DNA of 64,000 nt from Octopus sinensis (lineage: Eukaryota), in NCBI RefSeq assembly GCF_006345805.1, contig NC_043004.1, positions 17,422,001 through 17,486,000 on the forward strand, in the 5' to 3' direction. Shown in pieces: positions 15,201-64,000 of the stretch (position 1 is its first letter; each line of letters starts with the position of its first letter). Below the pieces are notes generated by a model that saw only the letters and a program-made list of their open reading frames with translations, did no database searches and was not told where the DNA came from. A program made the translations under genes and the position numbers.

Positions 15201-16879
15201 ACCCATTTTTGTATAGTTTAACTTTTCTTAATCCATTTAATCTCAAGGAAGTTTCCTTTTATCTTCTTTGCTCTTGCTATTCAAGGATGCACATACATGC
15301 ATACATGCATATAACGCACATACATGCATGCATAAATACGTACACACATACGTTATACATAGATACCTAATTCATGCATAATATACTCACATTATATGTC
15401 CATACACAATACAACATGCAACGTTGCTATTGGGGTATTTTCATGCAATTACTTTTGTAAAACGGTTTCATGAATATCTAGATTTGCTTCCTGCGCCATG
15501 AGAAACTAATAATAAAGGATGAAATACCCGAGAAATTGAAGTAATTTAATTTCGATATAAATCTGGATGTTCATCTGTATTTCTACAGTCACGAATATTG
15601 ATATATTTTGAGGAACGAAGAAGATTTCTGTTGTGTAGCTGTAGCATATTCGCCGCAGTCAGTGTCAGATGGGTCTATTAATTCGATGCAATTGAAGGAA
15701 AATCTGAAAGCTGTTAAATAAACATATATGTTGTTAACCATCTTATTGGTAGATTTGTCGGTTACTTGTAGCAGGAAGAGATCTTTCAACTTGTCAATAA
15801 GTGTTAGAGTGTTATTTTAATAAATGTTGATGTGACTGAAGATAATGATCGTATGTTAGAGTGGAAACGAAGTCGAATAAGTTGTTGAATTCATGATGGA
15901 GATTGCTAATGCTACAAGATTTGTAAGTGTAACATACTATCGAATTTTTTGCTTGATAAAAATGCTACCTTGCAAACAACACATCCAAAACATGAAAAGA
16001 ATTGAGATTTATCGATTAGTTTATTTCGGAATAAAATTTCATAGGTGATTTTCCAAAATATATGATAAAAATGAAAGCTTATCAACTATTGAGTGTTGCC
16101 GTGTAAAAGTGTTTCGTTTGAAGTGAATCAAGTTTCTAGGATGAAAGCAACACCTACAACATTGTCTTCTAACATTGATACAACGATTGCTATTTTAGTA
16201 TGGATCAATCGAGCATTTCATATCATCAATGTTATTAAATCCTGATTAGTTGTTGCAGCTTTAGCTGTTCCTGTTTGCTCATAATTATACTACCAACAAA
16301 TGATGACATCTGTTAGATGTATATTAGTTTACCACTACTATACTTCATACTCTTGACTCTTATTTTAACATTTTTGGTATTGGATTTCATCAACACATGG
16401 GGCAGCAGGAGATTGTTTCTTTCCTTTCCTTCGATGTAAGACAACCTCTGACATTTATGATATCTTTTAACAGAATATCGATTATAGACACAGCAGGTAA
16501 TTATACTGATATAAACTAGATCACTTATTCCTTGGAACTGTTCGTGTTATTTCTGCTGGTGTTGACATTTTAATGGAAATATAATCCCCTTGTTATTTAT
16601 ACGGTTTATTGTGAAAACTCGACCTGTTCGTTAGTGGGGCGAAATTCTGACTTCTGATCTGACTATATATCTATCAACTCATGTTGATGCAAGCAATCTA
16701 GTAACTTTTTGTCAGTATAAGGCTCCAAACAAGATTTGGCATTTAAATAGAACACTTTTCTCGCTTTTGAAGCATTATACTATAGTTTTCGCTACTGTCT
16801 GCTATGCTTCATGTATGCGCGACACAAGGGCGACACATGCGCATGCACGCACACATATGTTTGTATCTTCTATTTTTTA

Positions 16880-18505
16880 ATTATTATAAATCTTCCACTG
16901 AGGAGGGAGCCGGTTTCCAACAATAATACAAGGTTCCATTTTTGGGATGTAGTTAACACAAAAAAATTCACATTTAGAACTTGAGAAAAATCTTGCATAT
17001 TTTTACTGTTCCAATCACAAATTGCACTTGTGTGAATCAGCCGGTTGATTTCTCTTTCTGAAAATCCCAGTTTATCTAGATTCTCCTTTAAGCATTTACT
17101 AGCAAAACCTAGTGCTCCGATTATTATTGGAACGAATATGAATTCATAATCTGGATATAGAAGCTGGAGGTTTCGAAGCAGTTGTCCATAGATATCCGCT
17201 TCTTCTTTGATTTTCAAACATATATTTTTATCTGCAGGGCAGCTGACCTCTATGATGGTACATAGCTTTGCATCTCTGTCCCAAACAGCAATATCCGCCC
17301 TGTTATGTTTACATTTGACAGAAGTTTTGATAGGAATGTTCCTTCAGTATTCCTTGAGTTGGTGTTTATGAATGTTTTCCATAACAGAGGGATTTCCTAA
17401 GTTTATTTCAGGAGAGTCTTTTTTGCGGATGACATTATAAATTGTTTTAGCAACAACACCGTGCCGCATAGGGAGGTAGTACCGTAACGGCAGCTGCTAA
17501 TCACATGCATGATGTCTTCCACAGAAACATGACATAGCCTACGCATGAGCTTGCATCTTGGGATTACAAGACTGTCATTGTCTCTCTTGTTCACCAGGTA
17601 CTTTGTGGTAATCTCCAGTTTCTGGATTGCAAACGCATATCCCTCAGTGTGATGTGATGTAGTGGTCTTGTGTCCAAGAGTGGCTATGCTTCGTGTCAAT
17701 TCTACTGTCTTTTTCAAGCTTCCGGGAAACATACCCATGCGTAGTCTTTTTCTTGTATGCTGAGTGCTTTCCATCCAGGTCTTCTGTGAGGTAAGTGAGC
17801 TCAAATGTTTTGGGGTTGTATAGGAGATAATCAGGAAGAGAGTGCTTCTTGAGGAGCTCACTACCAACTCGTACAATGTTGCTGAATTCACTTTTCAGCA
17901 CTTCAGTTATATATTTATTTTTGCTGCTGTTGTTTAGCAGGTGCTGCCTGAATGATACCATACGGCATTCGAAGGCCGTCTGCACTAATCTCACGCCTCT
18001 ATCACCTCCATTTCTTCTTAGGTAGAGCCTATCAACATCACTGTTTCTGTGGAAGTTGCTAGTTGTTGTCAGGATTTTGCGGGTTTTGATATCTATGGAG
18101 TGGATTTCCTCTACAGACCAACCAAGTGTCCCAAATGTTCGGATCAGCACTGGTACTGTAAATGCATTGTTGGATATATTTTTGTTGTAAGAGGAGAGTT
18201 CCGACTGTCATATTTTCCTAAGTCTGATGTATTATTCTCGGGTCACTCTATCTTTATTCACAGTTCCTTCATATGATACATTTTCGACTATGCCTAGGTA
18301 CATGTAACAATCTATGTGTGGAATGGGGAGATAGAGAGATCGTTGATGCACAGGTTTTGGGTTTGGGAGACTGACTTTCCTTGCTCTATAACCAAATATG
18401 AACATTCCTTTTGGCCAAATTCCATGCCTATATCAGCTGAAAATGTTATTAATTCCAGTTGTTTTTTGGTATTGTTAAAATTCTTTGTGGAATGGGGGCA
18501 ATAGA
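16880..18505 (-). mobile_element. R4-like RLE retrotransposon (lineage E): RT thumb, CCHC knuckle and RLE; pseudogenised
   Basis: EFG..KC, DIKTRKILT..FHRNSDVDRLYLRRNGGDRG, CKLMRRLCHVSVEDIMHVISSC, and VPIIIGALG, spread across frameshifted ORFs 17644-18150, 17403-17891 and 16870-17217. Confidence 0.88.
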
Positions 18506-18559: not shown

Positions 18560-19335
18560 AATTATTTGAAAACTTCCTCTAAGAAAGCAGATGGTTTCTA
18601 ACAAATATACAAAGCCCCATCGTTAGAATGTAGATAACAAAAACAATGTCACCTCTTAAACTTGAGAAAAATCTTGCATATTTGTACTGTTCCACTTACA
18701 GATTGTATTCGTAATGTCCGTGTAAGCTGGTTGGTTACTTTACCTGAAAACCCTATCTTTTCTAGATTGTTACTAAACCAAGTGTAGCAATTATTATTGA
18801 CGTAATTGTGAATTTATAATCTAGGTTAGTGGTTCTCAGCCATTTTTACCTTTGGACCCTTTCATTTCTGTCTTACTCTGTTGGATCCCCACAACCATTC
18901 GATGTTCAAAAAATTCTATTATATTTCTGTAATTAAATATCATTAGGAATTGTATTAAAATATTGTTAAAATATACATAAATAATTTATTCTCAAACGCA
19001 TGATAATGCTTATACAACACATTATCATGTGTTTGAGAATAAATTATTTCTGTATATTTCAATACATCTCAACGTTTCTATAGCAAACATTGCTTGTTTA
19101 CTTTCATCGTAAGTTGAATTTATTGTTAAAATATTTTATGTATTGGAATAAAACTAATTAATTGCAGATAAGCTTTAACAACAAAATCTTATATGCACCT
19201 CCAAGGGCTATATGGGTCTCGGTTGAAAAACCGCTGATCTAGTTATAGAAGCTGAAAGTTTCGAAGCAGATGTCTGTAGTTATCCTCTTTCTCTTTAATT
19301 ATTAAAGAGATATTCACATGCACATTAGACGGCAG
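18560..19335 (-). mobile_element. Lineage E 3' fragment, split by a hAT MITE and cut by a SINE
   Basis: 18600-18826 and 19237-19335 align by eye with ~16920-17240. Confidence 0.75.
18827..19236. mobile_element. hAT-type MITE (410 bp)
   Basis: TIRs TAGTGGTTCTCAGCC / GGTTGAAAAACCGCTG; 8-bp TSD ATCTAGGT / ATCTAGTT. Confidence 0.8.
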
Positions 19336-19337
19336 CT

Positions 19338-19718
19338 GTGGAGGCGCAGTGGCCCAGTGGTTAGAGCAGCGGACTCGCGGTCGGAGGATCGCGGTTTCGA
19401 TTCCCTGACCGGGAGTTGAGTGTTTATTGAGCGAAGACACCTAAAGCTCCGCGAGGCTCCGACCGGGGGTGGTGGCGAATCCTGCTGAAACTCTTTCACC
19501 ACATCTTTCTCTAACTCTCTCTTTCTGTTTCTGTTGTACCTGTCTTTCAAAGGGGCTAGCCTTGTCACATTCTGTGTTACGCTGAATCTCCCCGAGAACT
19601 ACGTTAAGAGTACACGTGTCTGTGGAGTGCTCAACCTCTTGCAATGTTCATTCCACAAGCCGGCTGTTCCGTTGATCGGATCAATTGGACCCCTCGTCGT
19701 CGTAACCGACGGAGCGCC
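19338..19718 (+). mobile_element. tRNA-derived SINE family B
   Basis: Head GTGGAGGCGCAGTGGCCCAGTGGTTAGAGCAGCGGACTCGCGG..GGTTTCGATTCCC; tail ..CGTCGTCGTAACCGACGGAG.GC. Fragments also at 7177-7455, 42348-42408 (and its mirror) and 47990-48150. Confidence 0.9.
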
Positions 19719-22696: not shown

Positions 22697-23392
22697 GAGT
22701 GAGAGAGCAGTTCATGCCATCAAAGTGACACTGGGGTAAAATATACGAAGCCCAGTATACCCATCATGACTACCCGTCTGATAAAGGTACACCAGGCACA
22801 TGCATCACAACCATATGTGCGCGACATGGTGATCTCATATCAAGATAAACAGCACATGACCTTGCAGGTGGAGCCCAGTTAGAATTTTATTCAGATCGAG
22901 TAACCCATCCCGCTCAAAAGGTCCCTGAATAAGGGTTGTTTAAGGACGTTGAACGAAACACCCATGTTTCCAGAGGTGAATTATTCAAACCCCAAAGAAT
23001 CCTTCTCAACACATGGCTATGATGCTCCCCCACTACTTCTGCTCGTGATCAGAGATGCACACATCGTCAGCCACTAAGGGACATGCTCAACTGGTTAAGG
23101 TCAAACAACTGACAAGCAAATCTGTGGCATTGAGCAGAATATTTGATGTAGCCCATCTTTTATACCAAGACAAAACAATGTACATGATAACACTTCCAAT
23201 CAGTTAAGATCAGAAGCCATGAGAGCCACTGCCTGGTACTGCATCAGGGCATAGCAAATCTGTGGCATTGAGCAGAATATTTGATGTAGCCCATCTTTTA
23301 TACCAAGACAAAACAATGTACATGATAACACTTCCAATCAGTTAAGATCAGAAGCCATGAGAGCCACTGCCTGGTACTGCATCAGGGCATTT
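22697..23392 (-). mobile_element. Element X, longest copy, with a 138-bp tandem duplication
   Basis: Flanked by (ATT)n/(ATC)n tracts. Units 23115-23252 and 23253-23390 are direct repeats. Confidence 0.75.
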
Positions 23393-26229: not shown

Positions 26230-26890
26230 CATACATATATACATATAAAAATACCTAATACTTAAATACGTACATAAACACTTATATGTATGTAGGTATG
26301 TATGCATGCATGCATGCATACATACCTACATATTTAAATACATACATACACACATATGCATAGATAAATACATAGTACATACATACATATATACATGCAT
26401 ACACACGAAACTACATAATACTTAAATACATACATTTAAACACAGATGCACACACATATATACATAGACACATACATACATGCATACATACATACCTGCA
26501 TACTTAAATACATACATGCACACATACATGCACACAAACATAGACACATACATACACATACATACACATACATACATACATACATACATCATTACATACA
26601 TACATATGCAACGAGATAAACTAGTTTCTTTTCAAACTGTTATCGATTATGTATCATTTTAAAATTGTATATATACATATTCTTTCATTTTTTTTACCTC
26701 TTTTACGTGATTGTTTTTCTTTGGAGTCTGTCTGCTCTTCTTGACACTAATCCTTCATTCTTTTTCGAAGTAAAGGATAATATATTTCACACATCTACGA
26801 AACCAGAAGTTTCAGGCGTGAAGTTCTCCACAACACCATTTTCAGCGATTTTTCAAAACCATTTAAACGAACATGCCTGCGCGAGCACGA

Positions 26891-29711: not shown

Positions 29712-30387
29712 CATATGCACATATGCACATAAATTTTTATGCACGTGTGTGCATATGCATACACACACATATATGCATATATGTGTGCGCATTTATATAT
29801 TTATGTGTGTGCGTGCGTATAGGTATATGTATATACATGTATTGCAAAAAAATTTTGGCTTTATATAGTCACTATTACACGTGTTTCATTTACTAACAGA
29901 AGTTAGAAAATTGTGCATGTAATGTAAATCATGTTAGATATCTCGTATTAGAAATTCTTCAGATAGAGAATCAAATACATATAATATTTGCTAATAAAAT
30001 TATTTGATTCTCAGTCTGAAGAATTTCTGATAGGAGTTATCTTAATGCCTTACCTACATGTACAGTTTTCTACCTCCTATTAGCAAATGGAACACATGTA
30101 ATGGAGAACAAATAACATCAAAATGTTTTTCCAGTTTTCTTTTTTGATATGTAATTACTTTGCAGAAACTAGTTTCCAGTATTTTTCAACTCTTATACAT
30201 TTTCCACACAATTATGACATCTACATACAATTTTGAAGCACTGGAAAATACAAATATGCTTCACGAGGGCACAGATTGGATTATAGCTCAATCTACGTAG
30301 TATATATAGACATATATATATATATTATATAATATTATGTTTATATACTTATATATTGCATATGAATATTATATATATCTATATCTA

Positions 30388-34030: not shown

Positions 34031-34844
34031 TGTATAAAAATTGTATATAAAAAAATACAAAATGGGACAAGAACGCAAAACACACAAAGAGACGACACAA
34101 AAAACGGACGGGTCATTCGAAGCCTCTAATCTTCAGTCAGGAACCGGATCATCCTCGCAATTTCGGCTGATTAATCCTGAAATCGCTCCGATCCGGCCGG
34201 CCCCAAGGAAAAACTAAGCTACGAGCATTAGATTTCTTGGAAAAAGGATCGAATGTATACGAAACAAGGACAGAAAAACGGACGATGCCACACGAATATA
34301 AATACAAAAAACAAAAATAAAAGACAAGAATAGTAATAACAGGAGAAAAACCACGGGTGTCTTACGACTTTAGACAGTTCAACTTATCTTAGCTGGCGTA
34401 TTTGGAAATAAATGCCTTTGCGGCAGACAAAGAAAACGGTGTTGTCGTGGCGGCGGTCAAAGACCGAAAGGCTAGTTGACCAGCGGTCACGTGAGAGGAG
34501 AGAAGAAGAGAGAGAAAAACAGGGGGCAAAGGAATCAAAGAGAGAGAAAAAGAGGGACAAAGGCACCAAGGGGGGAATGAGAGAGAAAGAAGGAATTAAA
34601 GAGGGGAGAAGAAACAGAGCGTGCCAAGGATTGGCTTGGCAACAGAATCAGTGGTGCAAAGTGAGAAAGACAGAGAAATGTGAGAGAGTGGGGGAAGAGG
34701 AGACCAAAGAATCAGAGGCAAGAAAAGAATCGTTTTCTTCGTCTGCCGCAAAGGCATTTATTTCCAAATACGCCAGCTAAGATAAGTTGAACTGTCTAAA
34801 GTTCTTGTCCCATTTTGTATTTTTTTATATATAATTTTTATACA
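34031..34844. repeat. Two-part inverted repeat around a purine-rich spacer
   Basis: Inner arms 34367-34438 / 34731-34802 and outer arms 34031-34074 / 34801-34844. The right side is a fused reverse complement of both left segments, lacking the ~290 bp between them. Confidence 0.88.
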
Positions 34845-35034: not shown

Positions 35035-35217
35035 TTAAAATTATAGTTTAGGGTATGTAAGAGATAGCTCCATGCTGGAAATAGCAGCCAAAGCTTGACT
35101 CTAAAACCACATTAAATGTTCATGCGGTATGAACATTTAATGCGGTTTTAGAGTCAAGTTTTGGCTACTTTTTCCAGAGTGGAGGTATCTCTTAGATACC
35201 CTAATTATAATTTTAAT
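35035..35217. repeat. Fold-back hairpin, ~89-bp arms, 5-nt loop GCGGT
   Basis: ..CTTGACTCTAAAACCACATTAAATGTTCAT-GCGGT-ATGAACATTTAATGCGGTTTTAGAGTCAAG..; the outer arms are more diverged. Confidence 0.9.
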
Positions 35218-36286: not shown

Positions 36287-36464
36287 ATGAGAGGTAATGA
36301 TGTCAATGAGACCCAAATGTGTCAGGTAATGCTGAATAAGTGCTATGGATAGACCATAATTAAGTTCCAGATTCGATCATTACGAGAATAAGGGGTCCAA
36401 CTTAGGTCATACATCAGCGTGTGTATATAAAATCTTTTCGTAATTAGATAAAAAAAACAAGACT

Positions 36465-36576
36465 GTGTAGATTTTAGAACATTTATAAATAGGTCTTACA
36501 GTCTCCCATGAAGGGAGATAATAAATATCCTAGAAACAGCTGTAAGACCTATTTATAAATGTTCTAAAATCTACAC
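36465..36576. repeat. Short inverted repeat, ~37-bp arms
   Basis: GTGTAGATTTTAGAACATTTATAAATAGGTCTTACAG mirrored by CTGTAAGACCTATTTATAAATGTTCTAAAATCTACAC. Confidence 0.9.
36501..36548 (+). ncRNA. Degenerate hammerhead motif inside a short inverted repeat
   Basis: GTCT-CCCATGA-..GATA(ATAAA)TATC..-GAA-ACAGCTGT-A-AGAC. Stems I and III intact; two core substitutions. Confidence 0.45.
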
Positions 36577-36603
36577 GGCCTTGGTTATTTGTCTCATTAC
36601 GAA

Positions 36604-36864: not shown

Positions 36865-38432
36865 ATATATATATATATTATATATATGTGTATATAGGTG
36901 CAGTCTTGGCTGTGTGTTAAGAAGCTGGCTTCCAAACCGCATGGTTTCGGGCTCAGTCCCACTGCGTGACACCTTGGGCGAGTGTCTTTTACTATATCCT
37001 CGGGCCGACCAAAGCCTTGTGAGTGGATTTATATGTGTGTGTGTCTCTGTGTTTGTGTTTGCCCCTCACCACTGCTTAACAACCGGTGGTGATGTGTTTA
37101 CGTCCCCGTAAAAAAGTCCTAGGGTTGATTTGCTCGATTAAAGCCCTTCAAGGTGGTGCCCCAGCATCGTTGCAGTCAAATGACTGAAACAAGTAAAGAG
37201 TAAAAGATAAAAGTTATGTACACACACACACACATATGTATGTATATATGTACGCATGTATGTATACACGCACACGCACACACACATATATATATATACA
37301 TTATAAAAAAAGATGAATGGATTATCTAGTATTATTGCTACAATTGCTTCAGTAGGAGTCTTTATTGTAGTATAAACATAATACAGTTAGATGCGTAACA
37401 TGTTACATAATCAACAGATCATCAATAAACAAAATTTCAAATAAGAAATATAAAGATTTAAGAAATTTAATGTAGGGTGTGTCTCCAACCTGTCGATTTA
37501 GACGGGTAGATAGTGGAATAAGGTCGTAAATATAAGGGTAGGTAAATGCATTTATATCCTAATGAAGTAACTAAGAGTAGCGACCTCATCAGCAAAGGCC
37601 AATAGTAGCAGGATTTACTAGAATACACCAAGCAATAGGTGCCAAGCATGACATTTGACCATGTCAAAATGTTCGAAGTCATCTGCCAACGCAGCTCTGA
37701 GAGTCATTTATTGTACTATAATACTTTAAAGTCAGCGTTAGTTGTTTTTACTAACTTAATTAATCATGATAAGAGCGTTCCAAAAGAATATTACCGAACT
37801 AAGATAATATTAGCATAATTTAACGAAGATCGAGCTACTTATAAGACGGGGGAATAATTTAAGGTAGAACCGCTGATTAGCTACGTTTTTATAAGAAATT
37901 CTAGGGGAGAGGGAGGGAAAAGAAAGACGGAGAAGAAAAGAAGAAAATGTAATAAAACAAAAGAAAAATCAAGTAGAGAGAAAAAATTAGAGGGAAAGTG
38001 GTCCACGTGCTGACAGGAAGATGGCATTAGCATAAACAATTAAAGAAATGAGCATTCTAGAATAATGAAATTTGTACAAGTAATAAACAGTATTAACATA
38101 AAGATAAAAATGTATAAATTTATGAATTTACGTGGTTTGAAAAATGAAATATGTAGATATCAGTTAATTAGCTGTAAAGAATCAGTTGAAAGACTAAAGT
38201 GTGTTTGAGAAATAAAAGCAGAACAGTTACACGCGAGAAATAAGTCGAAAGACGTTAACCCAACTTTTATATCAACAAAGCATTTAATTTAAATGACTAT
38301 TTACTATAAATTTAAGTCTAAATAATAAGTAATTAAATCAAATAAATATATATTATGTTGAAATCAATTTATATTACTATAATAAATATATATTTAAAAA
38401 CAATATAATTATTTATTTATTAGCTAAATCTA

Positions 38433-39159
38433 TTATAAAGGTACTTTAATTTGTTTACATTTAATTTTACGTTTCTCCAATGAGTTTACCAACGCATAAT
38501 TGTTATTAAATAATATTTCTTTAAATTCGTTATTAAAAAGAGAACAATTATCACTCCCTATAGTATATGATTTAGCCCTACAAATAATATCCCAATTTAT
38601 TTATATTTAATAGATCTTGATTTAAGGTCCCAAATATATTTACTGAGACCTGTTGAATTTATAAGATTTTTATTCCTAAAAGATTACATATGTTGAGAAA
38701 TTCTAGATTTAATTTTATTCATAGTGGACCCTATATAAATAGTATTTAAATTAAGATAATTCAAATTCTTATCATCTATTATAGTTACCATACACTTATA
38801 GACTACATTATCTAAATTACAATAATTATTAAATTTAAATCCAGACTTATCTCTACATGTACAATAAATTAACTCTTGGTCTTTATTATTATTATTGGAA
38901 TCATTATTTAATCTATCTTTATAGAATTTCTTTAATTTAAAAATATTACATGAATAAATAATATTACCAACATTATTAGTAGTTGAATAACCAACTCCAA
39001 AATTATCTTTAGAAAAAATATAATATTTTTTTATTATCCCTAATAAATACTTCAATTATATTTAAAAATCTCTTTAATAAGATTTGTTTTAACCTGAGCC
39101 CCAAAAGGAATGATTAACCATATTTTATTTTTATTTTTATCTTTTATATTATGATTATA

Positions 39160-39235
<76 letters not shown>

Positions 39236-39680
39236 CTATCATTATTATTACTATCATTATTATTATTATTATTATTATTGTTATTATTACTATCATTATT
39301 ATTACTATAATTATTTGTAATATTATTAAATTTATTATCTTCATTAATTGAAAAAAATTTTATCTTATTTTTATTATGATTACTATTCTTTTTATTTTTT
39401 TTATTCTAATATTAAATTTATGATTTACATCATCAAAATTCCTATTATTCTTAAGACGATAAATACCTAAATAAAATTTATCATAATAAAAATCATTAAA
39501 ACTATTATCTTTTAAATTATAACTATGTTAACAAATATTAAAGAATTTAATATTATTATTGTATCCTGCCTCATTCAGGGCTTTATTATAATAAGGTGCA
39601 TGTTTATTAAAAGTCTCAAAATCATAAGAAAGTAATAATTTAAGCATTGTTTTTAGTTTTCCCTTAATGCATATTTAGTA
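38433..39680 (-). mobile_element. Penelope-like element relic (end of RT thumb, linker, GIY-YIG endonuclease)
   Basis: Translations FNKHAPYYNKALNEAGY; VKTNL; YSTTNNVGNII; CTCRDK..YCNLDNVVYKC..IYIGSTMNKIKSRISQH; SFRN..STGLSKYIWDLK..WDII..C match the PLE thumb, CxC-C-H and GIY-YIG layout. Contains stops and frameshifts; the RT core is missing. Confidence 0.85.
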
Positions 39681-39692
39681 TCTTATATATAT

Positions 39693-39739
<47 letters not shown>

Positions 39740-39964
39740 TAAAACTAATGTAGGATAAATTTTTTTTTTCGGGAAAATTTTTTTATCAATGGCCAGCATA
39801 TCAAAAAACACCTTCAAATGTTAAATTTATTAATAATTTACAAGATAAGGGCAAAAGAAAAATTCAAATGCCAAATTTGCCGAAAGAAAGACAAAAATTG
39901 TCAATCACCATTATAATTTATGCGTCTCGAAACAAACCGATAGAAATTTCTAAAAAATTCGTTA

Positions 39965-40023
39965 TTACCGTATTGGTCCAATTTCGGGGTTAATTCATAG
40001 AATTTTCCCCTCTTCAGCGGCAA
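39965..40023 (-). ncRNA. Type I hammerhead ribozyme, mirror copy of 40068-40125
   Basis: Reverse-complement copy in the left arm of the palindrome, with a GGGG/CCCC stem II. Same sense as the PLE ORF. Confidence 0.85.
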
Positions 40024-40067
40024 ATACTTGAGATATAAGTGAAATACTTACTCATACCCATGGGTAT

Positions 40068-40125
40068 TTGCCGCTGAAGAGGGGAAAATTCTATGAATTA
40101 ACCCGAAATTGGACCAATACGGTAA
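40068..40125 (+). ncRNA. Type I hammerhead ribozyme (PLE-associated)
   Basis: Stem I TTGCCG/CGGTAA, core CTGAAGA, stem II GGG..AATTC-TAT-GAATT..CCC, GAAA, near-palindromic stem III ATTGGACCAAT, cleavage triplet AUA after 40119. Confidence 0.85.
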
Positions 40126-40354
40126 TAACGAATTTTTTAGAAATTTCTATCGGTTTGTTTCGAGACGCATAAATTATAATGGTGATTGACAATTTTTGTA
40201 TTTCTTTCGGCATATTTGGCATTTGAATTTTTCTTTTGCCCTTATGTTGTAAATTATATATATATATATTTTTTTTTTAAGAATATATTTATATTTTAAA
40301 AGACTTTTTACGTATATTTATTAATTAATTATTTTATTATTCTAGTTTATCTTT

Positions 40355-40457
40355 AACCTGATGAGTGACTATATTTATATCGAAGTGATTTTACTACTAC
40401 TATTAATTTTTTTACTATAATCATTTCTTAAATATATCCACGAAACACGTGTCTTTA
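40355..40457 (+). ncRNA. Hammerhead-like motif with extended stem II
   Basis: CTGATGA at 40358; stem II GTG..TATATTTA..GAAGTGATT / AATCATTTC..TAAATATA..CAC; GAAA at 40442; palindromic stem III ACACGTGT; GUC triplet at 40451-40453. Stem I is weak (3 bp plus a mismatch). Confidence 0.65.
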
Positions 40458-40636
40458 TTCTACCAAATATATACGTTTTTATTATTATTTTGCAATTTAC
40501 TTAATAATCGGTATATTATTGTTATTTTATTTGAAATATTTCTATTATATGTAATTTTCTAGATCGTGTAATTTAATTGTTCATTTTGACTTGGTAAAAG
40601 GTGTTTTTTTCTAATTTATATATATATATATATATA

Positions 40637-40815
40637 CTGTTGTGTCTGGTTACAGTCATTTTCTTTTTGTGCCTTATAATTTAACACACGTACCGGCAAA
40701 ATTTTCCACTTATCCACTTATTTCTTATATTTATAAGAAATAAGTAGAAAGTTTACCGGTGAGTGAGTTAAATTATAAGGCACAAAAAGAAAATGACTCT
40801 CCCCAGACACAACAG
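40637..40815. repeat. Fold-back hairpin, ~85-bp arms
   Basis: CTGTTGTGTCTGG..CATTTTCTTTTTGTGCCTTATAATTTAAC mirrored by GTTAAATTATAAGGCACAAAAAGAAAATG..CCAGACACAACAG; centre CTTATA-TT-TATAAG. Confidence 0.9.
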
Positions 40816-41040
40816 ATTATGCTTCAACACACGAACTCACATAAAGAATCTTGCAAACCAAATCTATAAACGATACACACACACACACACACACACACAT
40901 ACAATAATATGAGGGAGTAATTCATTTTTTGTACTTTTTGTGATCTAGTTATATGTTTTATAATATATTTATTTTTTTCTTTATGATTTGGTTTATGTCT
41001 ATCATTGCTTAAATTACATAATATTGATTTTTCTCTAATT

Positions 41041-41092
<52 letters not shown>

Positions 41093-41766
41093 ATCATACA
41101 TATATATAATATAATATATATATAATATATATATAGTGTGTGTCTGTGTTGTGCGTGTGTGTGCGTGTGTGTCTATGTATGTATATATGTATATATATAT
41201 GTAGGTCCTGGGTTGAGTCGGGGTTAACCACAGTAAATAAGGTACTCAATACATAGCAGAGTAAAGTAATTTATTTTATAGCTTCCTGAAGATTTCATCT
41301 GAATGAAACAGTTCTAGTCCTGTAGAAACTCCTTCTATAAAATAAAAAATATATGTATATATATATATAGAGAGAGAGATTCTTCATATTGAATTAGTAC
41401 CTTACTCTTGTAAGTATTTAAAAAAATACGAAAATGTTACAAGTATAAGGTGTGTTATGAGCATTTATAGAACATGTATCCTATGTAAACTCAACAAACG
41501 ATTAAAGAGGGAGAAAAGAAGATAAAAGTTTTATAAAATTTTAATCCATGCATACATCGCTTTGAATGGTAACACCAATATGTAAGAAACATAGAAAAAA
41601 TTAAATTAATTATATAATATATATAGTTGAAATTTAAAGAAAAAGAAAAAACACGGGTATATGAAGAACAACCATGTGTATTAGTTTGGGAAACATGAAA
41701 AAGTCTTTTACGTTTCTAGCCTACGCTTTTTAACGGAATGGAATAGAGAAGACACAGACACACATG

Positions 41767-41825
<59 letters not shown>

Positions 41826-42089
41826 TGTATGTATGCATGCATGTGTGTGATTTCGCCTCATAGGTAATTTTTCAATATATTTCAGGTGGTCTGAATAGTC
41901 TTAATTATTTCTGTTTTCATCAATTATCCTTCTACATATTTAACAGACACCATTAAACTTTTGACGAATTCGTTTTGATTACTACTTCTATTTCTTAATT
42001 TTTATGCTCCCACCTACGCCTTTCCTCACGTCAACAGATATGTAGATAATTTTAACTATATATTTCTTACATACCCTGCTATAACGCTA

Positions 42090-42128
<39 letters not shown>

Positions 42129-42540
42129 ACACACATACGAACACACATAAACACACAGACACTCACACACACGCACATAGATACACACATGCACGCGCAC
42201 ACACACATACGCACACACACAAATAGAATAAAAAAAACTGAAAATGGACTGAGAGACATTTAGTAATTTACGGTAAAATATTGTAAACAGCTGTTTTTAT
42301 TTATTAATTTTCTGTATACACATTAGCAATCTGCTAGATCATCCAGGTGGGGGCGCAATGGCCCAGTGGCTAGAGCGGCGGACTCGCGTTGGAGGATCAC
42401 GGTTTCATATGCCTTAGAAACCGGGAAACCGGGCCCATGAACCTGGCTAGGCTTGAAAAGGGCGCATAAAAATTTAAAAAATGAATCACCATTTATATAT
42501 ATACTCTGATAGGCGAGCTAGCACGGAATGAACTGAACGA

Positions 42541-42591
42541 GCTGACCTTACTGAAGATGGCTACCGAAATAGCCGAAACTGGCGGGTCAGC
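42541..42591 (+). ncRNA. Hammerhead-like motif in the left arm of the giant palindrome
   Basis: CTGAAGA-T-GGCTA(CCGAAA)TAGCC-GAAAC-TGGCGG-GTC. Extra U after A9; stem I is imperfect. Confidence 0.55.
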
Positions 42592-42857
42592 TATATATAT
42601 ACTTTATTTAAAGCAGCAGAAAATTCAACAAAACCCGTTACAAAACAGGTTTTGTTGAATTTTCTGCTGCTTTAAATAAAGCATATTACTCTACCACTGG
42701 TATTTGAATACTCTTTTTTCCACCTTGTTTCACATTTATGTGTTTACTCCGTGGTAGAGTAATATGCTTTATTTAAAGCAGCAGAAAATTCAACAAAACC
42801 TGTTTTGTAACGGGTTTTGTTGAATTTTCTGCTGCTTTAAATAAAGTATATATATAT

Positions 42858-42910
42858 AGCCTGACCCGCCAGTTTCGGCTATTTCGGTAGCCATCTTCAG
42901 TAAGGTCAGC
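42858..42910 (-). ncRNA. Hammerhead-like motif, mirror of 42541-42591
   Basis: Reverse-complement copy in the right arm, with one extra G after GTCAG. Confidence 0.55.
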
Positions 42911-43323
42911 TCGTTCAGTTCATTCCGTGCTAGCTCGCCTATCAGAGTATATATATAAATGGTGATTCATTTTTTAAATTTTTATGCGCCCTTTTCAAGC
43001 CTAGCCAGGTTCATGGGCCCGGTTTCCCGGTTTCTAAGGCATATGAAACCGTGATCCTCCAACCGCGAGTCCGCCGCTCTAGCCACTGGGCCATTGCGCC
43101 CCCACCTGGATGATCTAGCAGATTGCTAATGTGTATACAGAAAATTAATAAATAAAAACAGCTGTTTACAATATTTTACCGTAAATTACTAAATGTCTCT
43201 CAGTCCATTTTCAGTTTTTTTTATTCTATTTGTGTGTGTGCGTATGTGTGTGTGCGCGTGCATGTGTGTATCTATGTGCGTGTGTGTGAGTGTCTGTGTG
43301 TTTATGTGTGTTCGTATGTGTGT

Positions 43324-43356
<33 letters not shown>

Positions 43357-43872
43357 TAGCGTTATAGCAGGGTATGTAAGAAATATATAGTTAAAATTAT
43401 CTACATATCTGTTGACGTGAGGAAAGGCGTAGGTGGGAGCATAAAAATTAAGAAATAGAAGTAGTAATCAAAACGAATTCGTCAAAAGTTTAATGGTGTC
43501 TGTTAAATATGTAGAAGGATAATTGATGAAAACAGAAATAATTAAGACTATTCAGACCACCTGAAATATATTGAAAATTTAGATACATATAAAATTTAGA
43601 TACAGTTGAATATGGTACTGAGGTTAAAGGTACCAGAATTTAGTATGGTATTATCCATATAATTTAAAATGGGGTGATTACAATCAAAATAAGCAACAAG
43701 AATATCCAGAGGTAATGCCGTACGATCGTTTCATGCGCATCCATTTAATTGAACAATGCAAATATTACATCAATTTGTTACAAATTGATGTAATATTTGT
43801 ATTGTTCAATTAAATGGAGTCGCATGAAACGATCGTACTGCATTACCTCTGGATATCCTTGTTGCTTATTTT

Positions 43873-43903
<31 letters not shown>

Positions 43904-43917
43904 TACACACACACACA

Positions 43918-43993
<76 letters not shown>

Positions 43994-55543: not shown

Positions 55544-56364
55544 GTAAGTGTAGTTCTTGTTTTAAACGAATGAAGAATACCTTTCTTCTTATTCGCTTAG
55601 TTAGCTGTCCTGCTTTCTAATCAACTGGAAAATTTCTTTGTACGTTACTCTGCAATTATGTGTGTGATATGCGCACACAGCAATGCGTACGTGTGTTTGC
55701 CTGCTTACAAAATAAACCGTTGATGCTTACGTGCTTACATACGTGTGCGCGTGTGTTGGAGGTCGTGTAAAAGTGCGTGCTTATGTACGTGTGTGTGTGT
55801 GTGTGTGTATACGCGCGTGTGTGTTTATGTGTCGGTGTGTGCATGTGTGTGAATTTATGCGTATATGTTTATGTACGAATGAATGCATGTGACTATGGTT
55901 GCGTGTGTGCCAGAGTTTTGTTATTCGGTTTATATTAGTTAGTTTGTATTTCTTCATATCTCTTGCTAAACGTAAGCAAATGTGCACGCCGCTTGTGTGC
56001 GTGTGCGTGCAATCGAAAACGTGTGTGCGTATTAGTGTATATGAATACGTGTATGTATATATATATATACACACACACATTCATACATACTTCTATACCA
56101 GTACGTATCTAAAAAAAGAAATAGATTCAGACGTGTGCGCGCACAAACTCACGCCCGCACACAAACGCGTGGGTATGTGTGTGTGTGTGTGTGGTGTGTG
56201 TGTATATATATTATATATATATATATCTATATATTATATATATATATATATATACATACATATATTATATATATATGTTACAGAGTAAGCGCATAAATTG
56301 TGAAACAAGGTGGAGAAAGGTGGTGCTCCAGCATGGCCACATCAATGACTGAAACAAAAAGAAT

Positions 56365-62711: not shown

Positions 62712-64000
62712 CTTTGATACTTTGATAGGTTTCGGCCATTATTGGCCCAGGCCATGTCTAACTTAATAGCACCACCTGGTGAAATCTTTCAAGTCAGAAT
62801 TTGGGCACTATGGCCCACTCAAGTAGAGAGTTATTGTTTACAGAGACATATCCGGGTGTAGGGGGTTTATCCAGAATTTCTTGAAGGAATCTGTCCAAAG
62901 ACTTCTTGAACCCTATAGGGTCTGTTTCTGTTTTAATGTGTTTTGGTGTAATGTTAAAGAGAGCAGGGCCAATTGAGGTGAAATAATTGTTATGAGATGA
63001 GAGTGCGATTTTTGTTGTGGGTGGATGGCACGGGGCCCAAGCCTTGGATGTACCTAAAGGTGATGCCAACATCATTTGGGCAATGCTGATGGAATATTTT
63101 CCACTCATGCAGATGCATGATGTAGCGCTCACGGCGACGTTGGAGAGAATAAAGTTTTAGCTTTTCTAGTCGACCCCAATAGTCGAGGCCTGTCATGCCA
63201 TCTATCTTTCTTGTGATTGACCTTTGAGGTGCTTCAACTTTTATGCTATTTGTTTTTGTGTGGGGAGACCACAGTGGACAACAGTATTCAAGGTGGGGTC
63301 GGGCAAAAGTGGAGAAGAGAAGGATAATGGTGTGGATATCTCTCGACTGGAAAGTTCTGAGAATCCAGGAACACATTCTGCGGGCCATGTCAACTTTGGT
63401 GTTTATATGAGTGGCCCAGCTTATGTTGTTGTCCACAATTACTCCCAAGTCTCTGATGTTGTTGGATGCCACGAGTGTTTCACCTGAAAGAAGGGAGTAT
63501 GGGAGTTTCAGGGGATCCACTTTTCCAAAGTGGATTAACTCGAATTTATGCTCGTTCAGCAGCATATTGTTCTTTTCTGCCCATTGGATAACAGCCAGTA
63601 GATCTGACTGAAGGCATGTCCGGTCACTCGCCTCATTTACGACCTTCTGGAGCTTGGAATCATCTGCAAAGATTTTTATGTTGCTGTGCTTGATGATGTC
63701 ATTAATGTCATTAATGTAGATGATGAAAAGAAGTGGGCCCAGCACAGTGCCTTGCGGAACGCCACTACTGACTTTGGCTGGGCTTGATTTTACTCCTTCA
63801 ACTACAACATGTTGAGATCTGTCTGTCAGGAAATACTTGATCCATTTCAGTAACTTTCCAGAGACACCAATGTTGGATAGTTTTTTCAATAGGATCTTGT
63901 GATCAACCCTGTCGAAGGCCTTGCTGAAATCAAGGTAGATGACATCGGTGTTGGAGCCCTCTCCCAAAGCTCTCAAAATGTCATCAAAGTGATGCAGGAG
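62712..64000 (-). mobile_element. CR1/Jockey-group LINE, 3' part of RT ORF2, running off the window end
   Basis: ORF 62990-63976 has the RT motifs YLDFSKAFDRVDH, GVPQGTVLGPLLFIIYIND, FADD, DLGV and RPHLEYCCPLWSP. The C-terminus continues in ORF 62794-63132 after a frameshift near 63130. The 3' end carries an ATCAAAGT doublet next to a TA-rich tract. Confidence 0.92.

What the first reader, a model, noticed from the sequence alone, without database searches (positions are those of the whole stretch)
41866..43579. 1.7-kb near-perfect palindrome of ordinary genomic DNA, with nested hairpins
Seen: the ~830-bp arms duplicate a mixture of unique DNA, microsatellites, a SINE head and a hammerhead, so this is not a TIR transposon. 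Each arm contains an inner hairpin next to the centre. The arms differ by only a few indels. Inference: a recent fold-back inverted duplication nucleated at PLE-type terminal sequence; potentially cruciform-forming and unstable. Caveat: fold-back artefacts from long-read or amplified libraries can look like this, although arm differences argue modestly against that.
Basis: partly seen in the sequence, partly recalled or inferred. Interest (0 to 1): 0.72.

Follow-up and report, generated by a model that had tools for sequence, protein, structure and literature searches.

The report
Young 1.7-kb palindrome of ordinary DNA
A 1.7-kb stretch of repeat-rich, non-coding animal DNA is followed by its own mirror-image copy; this is most likely a very recent repair or replication accident rather than a mobile element, and only the raw sequencing reads can exclude an assembly error.

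Summary
Window 41865-43581 is a 1,717-bp palindrome: arms of 833 and 831 nt around a 53-nt non-palindromic spacer. The arms differ by one mismatch at the outer edge and four length differences. Each arm carries microsatellites, a 60-nt tRNA-like SINE head, a hammerhead-like motif and a perfect 34-bp-stem hairpin beside the centre.

It is not a TIR transposon: there is no target-site duplication, no ORF and no other copy in the window. The link to Penelope-like elements (PLEs) fails. The hammerhead core matches PLE-type minimal hammerheads, but it lacks a cleavage triplet in register with helix I. The two motifs converge on the centre, whereas real PLE inverted pairs diverge.

The arm differences do not argue against an artefact. 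All four are run or microsatellite length changes, unlike the substitution-dominated divergence of seven older palindromes in the same window (p=0.001). Three other things argue against a simple fold-back read. The right arm is followed by an unrelated flank. The spacer is genomic sequence. Diverged palindromes nearby show that palindromes exist naturally in this DNA.

Best reading: a very young fold-back (template-switch) inverted duplication, confidence about 0.55. Assembly artefact: about 0.25. Ordinary kind of event; modest interest.

The parts
41865..42697 (+). Left arm of the palindrome (833 nt)
   Evidence: Global alignment to the reverse complement of 42751-43581: 826 aligned positions, 1 mismatch, 4 indel events
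42698..42750 (.). Asymmetric 53-nt spacer at the centre. Genomic sequence, not an adapter.
   Evidence: No fold of its own (z = +0.4). Its right 36-37 nt match 56283-56318 (-) at about 88%; in that copy the shared segment ends against (TA)n
42751..43581 (-). Right arm of the palindrome (831 nt), the reverse complement of the left arm
42602..42681 (.). Inner hairpin of the left arm: perfect 34-bp stem, 12-nt loop, ending 16 nt before the spacer
   Evidence: RNA fold -53.3 kcal/mol, z = -16; stem coordinates
42767..42846 (.). Inner hairpin of the right arm (mirror copy)
42541..42591 (+). Hammerhead-like motif, left arm: GCUGACC-UUA-CUGAAGA-U-GGCUA(CCGAAA)UAGCC-GAAAC-UG-GCG-GGUCAGC
   Evidence: The core descriptor occurs only here and in the mirror copy, and in 0 of 200 random windows. 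The same core and helix II occur in more than 120 metagenome contigs, where they carry GUH and helix I in register. Here either GUH is missing in the helix I register, or helix I is missing in the GUC register. No Rfam hit
42859..42910 (-). Hammerhead-like motif, right arm. One extra G breaks the 7-bp outer stem.
42349..42407 (+). tRNA-like SINE head, left arm. It lacks one G present in the other SINE copies of the window.
   Evidence: ARAGORN calls no tRNA
43044..43103 (-). tRNA-like SINE head, right arm
42085..42240 (.). Microsatellite block (CT)n (CTAT)n imperfect (CA)n in the left arm. Its mirror is at 43212-43361. The (CT)n tract is 6 bp longer in the left arm.
43574..43604 (+). Direct repeat AAAATTTAGATACA twice, 17 bp apart, starting in the last 8 nt of the right arm. 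Possible microhomology or templated-insertion footprint at the outer junction.
   Evidence: The footprint reading is inference.

Best explanation
This is a real, very young inverted duplication made at the DNA level and not by transposition.

Proposed course of events. A break or stalled fork arose just right of a pre-existing hairpin-forming sequence (the 34-bp-stem quasi-palindrome at 42602-42681). The free 3' end, near 42750, folded back onto its own or the sister strand with almost no homology and copied about 830 nt backwards. The new end was then joined to the other side of the break at 43577-43582, through a short A/T microhomology.

The product is L - arm - 53-nt spacer - inverted arm - R. 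The arms carry whatever lay there: unique DNA, microsatellites, a SINE head and a decayed PLE-type hammerhead relic. The single strand folds into one long hairpin, so the locus should be a replication obstacle and prone to central deletion.

Shown: the structure, its near-identity, the absence of transposon hallmarks, and the distinct flanks. Inferred: the break, the fold-back priming, which arm is the copy, and the role of the inner hairpin.
For: 1. The arms are essentially identical over 826 aligned nt and are separated by a 53-nt asymmetric spacer. This is the geometry of fold-back inversions described in yeast and human cells (abstracts of PMC7467729 and PMC10622511).

2. At the centre the arms end cleanly, with at most a 2-nt GG overlap if one base is bulged. 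At the outer right junction, AAAATTTAGATACA occurs twice 17 bp apart, and the first copy overlaps the arm's last 8 nt.

3. No target-site duplication, no ORF of 60 aa or more, and no other copy of the unique arm segments in 64 kb.

4. The arms hold fragments of unrelated repeats: a SINE head shared with three SINE copies elsewhere, and a hammerhead-like relic.

5. The right arm is followed by an unrelated flank, not by the reverse complement of the left flank. The spacer is genomic.

6. Seven other single-locus palindromes of 97-447 bp lie in the window, three of them within 2 kb of this one, with arm identities of 80-97%. Palindromes therefore exist and persist naturally in this DNA.

7. Weak hint on direction: joining the spacer directly to the right flank extends the match to the 56283 copy by 8 of 10 nt.
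Against: No independent read, haplotype or related genome could be consulted, so the structure rests on one assembled sequence.

The differences between arms are all length differences of the kind that long-read consensus errors produce. They give no independent proof that two arms exist in the DNA.

Microhomology at the centre is minimal. The junction 'footprint' lies in A/T-rich low-complexity sequence.

An 830-nt snap-back tract is long for polymerase-theta-type end joining (my own knowledge). A break-induced or fork-switch type of synthesis would have to be invoked.

The older palindromes could be single copies of MITE families and not products of the same process.
Confidence: 0.55

Rival explanations
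1. Sequencing or assembly artefact. A fold-back or chimeric long read (or an amplified molecule) was built into the consensus, perhaps at a former contig end or closed gap. The real genome has only one arm.
For: The arms differ only by length changes in short runs and microsatellites. This spectrum differs from the natural divergence seen in older palindromes of the same window (p = 0.001) and is typical of under-polished long-read consensus. Fold-back reads make up about 0.55-0.6% of ONT genomic reads (PMC12870357), and whole-genome amplification makes palindromic chimeras (abstract of PMC6218980). The region is dense in microsatellites and hard to assemble.
Against: A read-through of the two strands of one molecule would continue from the right arm into the reverse complement of the left flank. 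Here an unrelated flank follows after exactly one arm length, and the contig runs on for 20 kb. There are no Ns in the window. The centre holds 53 nt of genomic sequence and no symmetric junction. Fold-back reads are individually random, and assemblers screen for them (PMC12870357). No other near-identical inverted duplicate is in the window.
Confidence: 0.25
2. A non-autonomous DNA transposon with very long terminal inverted repeats (Foldback- or Galileo-like), present here as one copy.
For: Almost the whole unit is inverted repeat with a short middle, as in foldback-type elements (my own knowledge). The window also holds several short palindromes that could be MITEs.
Against: No target-site duplication of any length at the ends. 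No second copy of any unique arm segment in the window. No transposase remnant. The arms contain a SINE head and a retroelement ribozyme relic at mirrored positions. The termini share nothing with the termini of the other palindromes.
Confidence: 0.08
3. A reverse-transcriptase-mediated inverted double insertion of the Penelope-like kind, or snap-back of a cDNA.
For: The hammerhead-like core is of the PLE minimal type, with the extra nucleotide after A9, the G10.1-C11.1 pair, and GAAAC (PMC4209133). PLE insertions are known to form inverted repeats and to prefer microsatellites (PMC8557442). Both arms end at the same outer nucleotide and differ by 53 nt at the inner end, as two differently 5'-truncated cDNAs would.
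Against: The orientation is wrong. PLE inverted pairs are head-to-head with diverging hammerheads (L019, L064; PMC8557442), and here they converge. The motif lacks a GUH triplet in register with helix I, which 74 of 87 relatives have within 6 nt. There is no RT or endonuclease ORF next to it. The arms consist mostly of non-PLE sequence. No poly(A) or repeat tail at the outer ends.
Confidence: 0.07

Closest known systems
Fold-back inversions / inverted duplications formed at breaks or stalled forks (yeast GCR systems, human inverted copy-number variants, cancer genomes)
   Same: Two adjacent inverted copies of ordinary local DNA, a short asymmetric spacer, little or no homology at the turn-around, and no transposon hallmarks (abstracts of PMC7467729, PMC10622511 and PMC10766186).
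   Different: Those events usually yield hairpin-capped or dicentric chromosomes, or duplications of many kb. Here the copy is only 0.83 kb and is interstitial, rejoined to a normal flank. No ancestral allele is available to prove the event.
Palindromic AT-rich repeats (PATRRs) of human chromosomes 11, 17 and 22 (from my own knowledge)
   Same: Near-perfect, non-coding palindromes several hundred bp long that form hairpins or cruciforms and are unstable and polymorphic.
   Different: PATRRs are far more AT-rich and have almost no spacer. This one is 37% GC, has a 53-nt spacer that should slow cruciform extrusion, and is built from recognisable repeats.
Head-to-head inverted insertions of Penelope-like elements
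   Same: Inverted copies carrying a minimal hammerhead-type motif, with the inner ends unequal in length and microsatellites nearby (PMC8557442).
   Different: The orientation is opposite: the motifs converge instead of diverging. The arms are mostly non-PLE DNA. The motif is not a canonical hammerhead. There is no RT/EN ORF.
Fold-back chimeric reads of long-read or amplified libraries
   Same: Perfect or near-perfect palindrome, with arm differences limited to length errors (PMC12870357).
   Different: Bounded arm, distinct right flank, internal position in a gap-free 64-kb stretch, genomic spacer.

Membership tests
DNA-level fold-back inverted duplication | Two adjacent copies in inverted orientation with near-identical sequence | tested here: met
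   833/831-nt arms, 1 mismatch and 4 indel events in 826 aligned nt
DNA-level fold-back inverted duplication | Asymmetric spacer with no or minimal homology at the turn-around | tested here: met
   53-nt spacer; at most 2 nt (GG) of extra complementarity if one base is bulged
DNA-level fold-back inverted duplication | A single-arm ancestral allele (L-arm-spacer-R) exists in relatives or the other haplotype | not testable with these tools
   No eukaryotic genome or read collection is reachable. Protein-based look-ups of ORFs from the window found nothing. The only hint is an 8/10-nt extension of homology across a spacer-R join.
TIR DNA transposon / Foldback element / MITE | Target-site duplication flanking the inverted repeats | tested here: not met
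   Left flank ...CCTCATAGG, right flank GATACATAT...; no direct repeat of any length at either candidate boundary
TIR DNA transposon / Foldback element / MITE | Multiple dispersed copies | tested here: inconclusive
   None in the 64-kb window. The genome could not be searched.
TIR DNA transposon / Foldback element / MITE | Transposase gene or remnant (autonomous members) | tested here: not met
   Longest ORF inside is 46 aa and is microsatellite-encoded
Penelope-like element inverted insertion | Head-to-head orientation (5' ends at the centre, hammerheads diverging) | tested here: not met
   Motifs at 42541-42591 (+) and 42859-42910 (-) converge. L019 and L064 show the diverging arrangement.
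Penelope-like element inverted insertion | RT / GIY-YIG endonuclease ORF or element body adjoining the repeat | tested here: not met
   No such ORF within several kb. One ORF at 38684-39055 looked GIY-YIG-like by eye but has no Pfam support.
Hammerhead ribozyme (PLE-type minimal, type I) | Core boxes CUGANGA and GAAA around helix II, with a G10.1-C11.1 pair and an extra nucleotide after A9 | tested here: met
   CUGAAGA-U-GGCUA...UAGCC-GAAAC. Only these two sites in the window; 0 in 200 random windows. Same features as listed in PMC4209133.
Hammerhead ribozyme (PLE-type minimal, type I) | GUH cleavage triplet directly followed by the 3' strand of helix I, which pairs with the bases just 5' of CUGANGA | tested here: not met
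   In the GUC register there are 0 contiguous helix I pairs. In the register of the 7-bp stem GCUGACC/GGUCAGC the triplet is GCG, and 3 extra nt precede C3. Of 87 relatives, 74 have GUH within 6 nt, and 53 of those have at least 3 helix I pairs.
Hammerhead ribozyme (PLE-type minimal, type I) | Match to a curated hammerhead covariance model | tested here: not met
   No Rfam hammerhead family at gathering score or at E<=10
Fold-back read / assembly artefact | The palindrome continues into the reverse complement of the flank, or ends a contig | tested here: not met
   The right arm stops after 831 nt and unrelated sequence follows. No Ns, and 20 kb more of contig.
Fold-back read / assembly artefact | Symmetric junction or adapter sequence at the centre | tested here: not met
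   The 53-nt spacer shares 36-37 nt with another locus of the window. It was not compared with adapter sequences.
Fold-back read / assembly artefact | No support from independent reads; single-copy depth on the arms | not testable with these tools
   No reads are available

The most novel reading that the evidence does not exclude
The 1.7-kb palindrome is the youngest product of a recurrent, local process of palindrome birth in this genome. In this reading, hairpin-forming sequence provokes breaks whose fold-back repair makes a larger palindrome around it, which would explain the nesting of a 34-bp-stem hairpin inside 830-nt arms. The other single-locus palindromes of the window (76-100% self-complementary by BLAST; three within 2 kb) would be older products. 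If so, birth, stabilisation by asymmetric centres and decay of palindromes could be measured in a metazoan germ line. Such loci would also be a steady source of long double-stranded RNA if transcribed.
Probability: 0.2. Interest if true: 0.55.

Novelty: new member of a known kind. Interest (0 to 1): 0.3.

Why it matters
If real, this is a clean, datable example of a germ-line fold-back duplication. Under a TE clock published for Octopus vulgaris, which I borrowed and did not test for this organism, it is under about 0.5-0.8 million years old. Both junctions are preserved, so the repair pathway can be read from the sequence and the fate of a long palindrome followed in a population.

In practice it is also a site to flag in the assembly. 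Short-read polishing and variant calling will fail on the arms. The locus may be structurally polymorphic or unstable in cloning and PCR.

If it is an artefact, it marks a local misassembly. Either way the kind of event is known, so the general interest is modest.

Tried and rejected
1. Independent copies through proteins. A composite query of all non-low-complexity stop-to-stop translations across the centre, the arms and both junctions found nothing at E<=10. Exact look-ups of two long window ORFs were not on record.

2. Species identification. The RT fragment at 62990-63976 has no relative above 59% identity at full coverage, or 77% over about half of the query, and no informative names. 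Searching three repeat strings in the paper library gave nothing. From memory the SINE and the GGCCATGCTGGAGCACCGCC repeat look like octopus repeats. This is not tested.

3. Rfam and ARAGORN found no hammerhead and no tRNA. The Rfam E-value hits are generic long-hairpin matches to plant miRNA families, all far below gathering scores.

4. I tested whether 'hammerhead followed by a strong hairpin' is a general PLE feature, which would have tied the inner hairpin to the PLE relic. It is not: in 87 loci the median z downstream is -0.57 and upstream -0.58.

5. Target-site duplications of 2-10 bp at either candidate boundary: none.

6. An ORF at 38684-39055 looked like a GIY-YIG endonuclease by eye. 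Pfam gives no such hit even at E<=10.

7. Which arm is the copy. The SINE head points to a derived 1-nt loss in the left arm and the hammerhead-like stem to a derived 1-nt gain in the right arm, so there is no polarity.

8. The 37-nt segment shared between the spacer and 56283-56318 has different neighbours on both sides. It gave only a weak hint that the spacer and the right flank were once adjacent.

Full report
WHAT IS THERE. The window is gap-free eukaryotic DNA with about 35% GC, crowded with microsatellites and decayed retroelements. At 41865-43581 it holds a 1,717-bp palindrome. The left arm is 41865-42697 (833 nt). A 53-nt spacer at 42698-42750 has no self-complementarity. The right arm is 42751-43581 (831 nt). 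Over 826 aligned positions the arms show one mismatch, four bases in from the outer edge (41868/43578), and four length differences. These are a (CT)n tract 6 bp longer on the left, G versus GG in the SINE head, and G versus GG next to (TA)4 versus (TA)5 just after the hammerhead-like motif. It is the only inverted repeat in the window above 99% identity. The central 791 nt fold as single-stranded DNA into one continuous hairpin of -479 kcal/mol, 81 standard deviations below shuffles.

WHAT THE ARMS ARE MADE OF. From the outside inwards, in left-arm coordinates:
- about 220 nt with no other copy in the window;
- a compound microsatellite at 42085-42240;
- about 105 nt of unique A/T-rich sequence;
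- a tRNA-like SINE head at 42349-42407, 87-89% identical over about 60 nt to the heads of SINE copies at 19338, 19871 and 7179, diverging after that;
- a hammerhead-like motif at 42541-42591;
- (TA)5;
- a perfect 34-bp-stem hairpin with a 12-nt loop at 42602-42681;
- 16 more nucleotides up to the spacer.
There is no ORF of note, no tRNA, and no Rfam family at gathering score.

THE 'HAMMERHEAD'. The core CUGAAGA-U-GGCUA(CCGAAA)UAGCC-GAAAC is not a chance match. A descriptor asking for CUGANGA, an optional extra base, a G-C-closed stem of at least 4 bp and GAAA finds only these two sites in the window, and none in 200 random windows of the same composition. I take these to be animal host DNA, judging from the hammerhead and repeat content; this was not verified. 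Aligned, they show the published PLE minimal-hammerhead layout: helix I 5' strand, CUGANGA, one extra base, helix II, GAAAC, usually AU, then GUC or GUA, then the helix I 3' strand (PMC4209133). Of 87 distinct relatives, 74 have GUH within 6 nt of GAAAC, and 53 of those have three or more helix I pairs in register. The window's motif has neither. In the GUC register there is no helix I. In the register of its strong 7-bp stem (GCUGACC/GGUCAGC) the triplet is GCG, and three extra bases precede the core. Rfam finds no hammerhead even at E<=10. I therefore call it a relic or variant of a PLE-type hammerhead and predict that it is inactive. That prediction is inference.

IS IT A PLE STRUCTURE? PLE insertions do form inverted repeats, but head-to-head: a 5'-truncated inverted copy abuts the 5' end (PMC8557442). 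Two metagenome contigs show this with the same hammerhead family. L064 has arms of at least 194 nt at 97% with no spacer. L019 has 123-nt arms at 90% with a 13-nt spacer. In both the left motif is on the minus strand and the right motif on the plus strand, so the ribozymes point away from the centre. In the window they point towards it. The centre lies 107 nt beyond the motif, and about 680 nt of each arm lie upstream of it and are not PLE sequence. A strong hairpin downstream of the hammerhead is not a general PLE feature either. The PLE relic is a passenger, not the cause.

IS IT A TRANSPOSON? There is no target-site duplication at either possible boundary, no transposase remnant, and no second copy of the unique arm segments in 64 kb. 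The termini are unlike those of the other palindromes in the window. A SINE head and a ribozyme relic sit at mirrored positions, which means the arms were copied from one another after those elements had arrived. A single-copy foldback-type element cannot be excluded without the genome, but nothing points to one.

REAL OR ARTEFACT? They do not. Seven older palindromes in this same window differ between their arms by 65 substitutions and 7 indel events. The 1.7-kb palindrome shows 1 and 4 (Fisher p = 0.001; p = 0.0003 if the edge mismatch is left out). Two of the four differences are single G versus GG, which are not slippage hot spots. This is the signature of residual length errors in a long-read consensus. 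Such errors are to be expected where short-read polishing cannot place reads on identical arms (inference). The true arms are therefore probably identical, and the differences say nothing either way.

Other evidence does bear on the question. First, a read that runs through both strands of one molecule would continue from the right arm into the reverse complement of the left flank. Here the arm stops after 831 nt, unrelated sequence follows, and the contig continues for another 20 kb without Ns. Second, the centre is 53 nt of genomic sequence. Its right 36-37 nt recur at 56283-56318 on the other strand at about 88% identity. Third, fold-back reads are about 0.55-0.6% of ONT genomic reads and virtually absent from HiFi reads, and assemblers screen for them (PMC12870357). 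Fourth, the window holds other single-locus self-palindromes: 18966-19062, 29843-30133, 35035-35216, 36437-36603, 39822-40268, 40637-40815 and 43686-43872, plus a 44-bp low-complexity one at 26289-26332. Their arm identities are 80-97%, and three of them lie within 2 kb of this one. Diverged palindromes cannot be artefacts, so this DNA tolerates palindromes. I put a real structure at about 0.7 in all and an artefact at about 0.25.

HOW IT MOST LIKELY AROSE. The geometry is two inverted copies of local DNA with a short asymmetric spacer and essentially no homology at the turn. At most a GG overlap exists there, and only if one base is bulged. This is the geometry of fold-back inversions formed when a resected or stalled 3' end pairs back on its own or the sister strand and is extended (abstracts of PMC7467729 and PMC10622511). 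Because the duplication is interstitial, the extended end must have been released after about 830 nt and joined to the other side. At that outer junction AAAATTTAGATACA occurs twice, 17 bp apart, and the first copy overlaps the arm's last eight bases. That fits microhomology-guided joining with a short templated insertion, but the sequence is A/T-rich and this remains inference. The perfect 34-bp-stem hairpin 16 nt from the spacer is a plausible cause of the initial break or stall, again by inference. It is not the fold-back primer, since each arm contains it whole. Which arm is the copy cannot be decided. Each arm carries one derived single-base length change, and joining the spacer directly to the right flank extends homology to the 56283 copy by only 8 of 10 nt.

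AGE AND CONSEQUENCES. With 0-1 substitutions in 826 sites, the arm divergence is below 0.36-0.57% at 95% confidence. Under the TE clock used for Octopus vulgaris (a JC distance of 0.065 for 18 My; PMC13282606), that gives under 0.5-0.8 My, or older if the arms convert one another. The organism was not identified, so this clock is borrowed. By the same clock the five less diverged of the older palindromes would be about 5-15 My old and the most diverged about 30 My. A 53-nt spacer should hinder cruciform extrusion from duplex DNA. It does not hinder hairpin formation on single strands during replication (my own knowledge), so instability and central deletions are to be expected.

VERDICT. It is worth a check against the reads, both as a possible polymorphic unstable site and as a possible local misassembly, but it is not a new kind of element.

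Noticed in passing
window 18966-19062, 26289-26332, 29843-30133, 35035-35216, 36437-36603, 39822-40268, 40637-40815, 43686-43872; also 34367-34438 / 34731-34802: Eight further single-locus self-palindromes of 44-452 bp, 76-100% self-complementary by BLAST, several abutting microsatellites. Three lie within 2 kb of the 1.7-kb palindrome. There is also a pair of 72-nt inverted arms at 98.6% separated by 292 nt. The three self-palindromes nearest the finding have no other copy in the window; the others were not searched. They may be MITEs of different families or older local inverted duplications.
   Followed up: partly
metagenome loci L001-L120 (e.g. L019 2120-2248, L064 354-669, L036 67-95): More than 120 metagenome contigs carry a minimal hammerhead with the same helix II (GGCUA...UAGCC). 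I presume these are animal host DNA, which was not verified. Several carry head-to-head inverted pairs, and some abut (TA)n. Helix II appears strongly conserved across unrelated hosts.
   Followed up: partly
window 42715-42750 and 56283-56318 (-): A 36-37-nt segment (TCCACCTTGTTTCACATTTATGTGTTTACTC-like) is shared at about 88% identity, with different neighbours on both sides. At 56283 it joins a fragment of the abundant GGCCATGCTGGAGCACC repeat to a (TA)n tract.
   Followed up: partly
window 947, 8168, 9033, 24488, 32177, 51782, 56319, 58142, 60035: Nine copies of a repeat family containing GGCCATGCTGGAGCACCGCC...GTTACGGGGACGTAAACACACCAGCATC, often next to microsatellites. From memory this resembles octopus repeats. 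The organism could not be confirmed.
   Followed up: partly
window 23115-23252 / 23253-23390: A perfect (100%) tandem duplication of a 138-bp unit. It is the only other duplicate of at least 99% identity in the window.
   Followed up: no
window 38000-42000, ORF 38684-39055 (-): A very A/T-rich stretch (20-26% GC against about 35% elsewhere) with poly-Ile/Asn pseudo-ORFs. One 123-aa ORF ends in a pattern that looks like GIY-YIG by eye (VVYK...YIGST...R..QH), but Pfam gives no such match.
   Followed up: partly
window 62990-63976 (-) and 16870-18150 (-): Retroelement remnants. One is a 328-aa ORF with an RVT_1 domain; its best database relatives are 59% identical at full coverage (77% over about half of the query). 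The other is a set of broken ORFs that look like another RT-bearing element by eye, without Pfam hits.
   Followed up: partly
window 41750-41850 and 43873-43990: The microsatellites on the two sides of the locus are mirror images: (TA)n then (TG)n on the left, (CA)n then (TA)n on the right, 81-82% complementary over 62 nt. This may be chance in such microsatellite-rich DNA, or the trace of an older and larger inverted structure.
   Followed up: no
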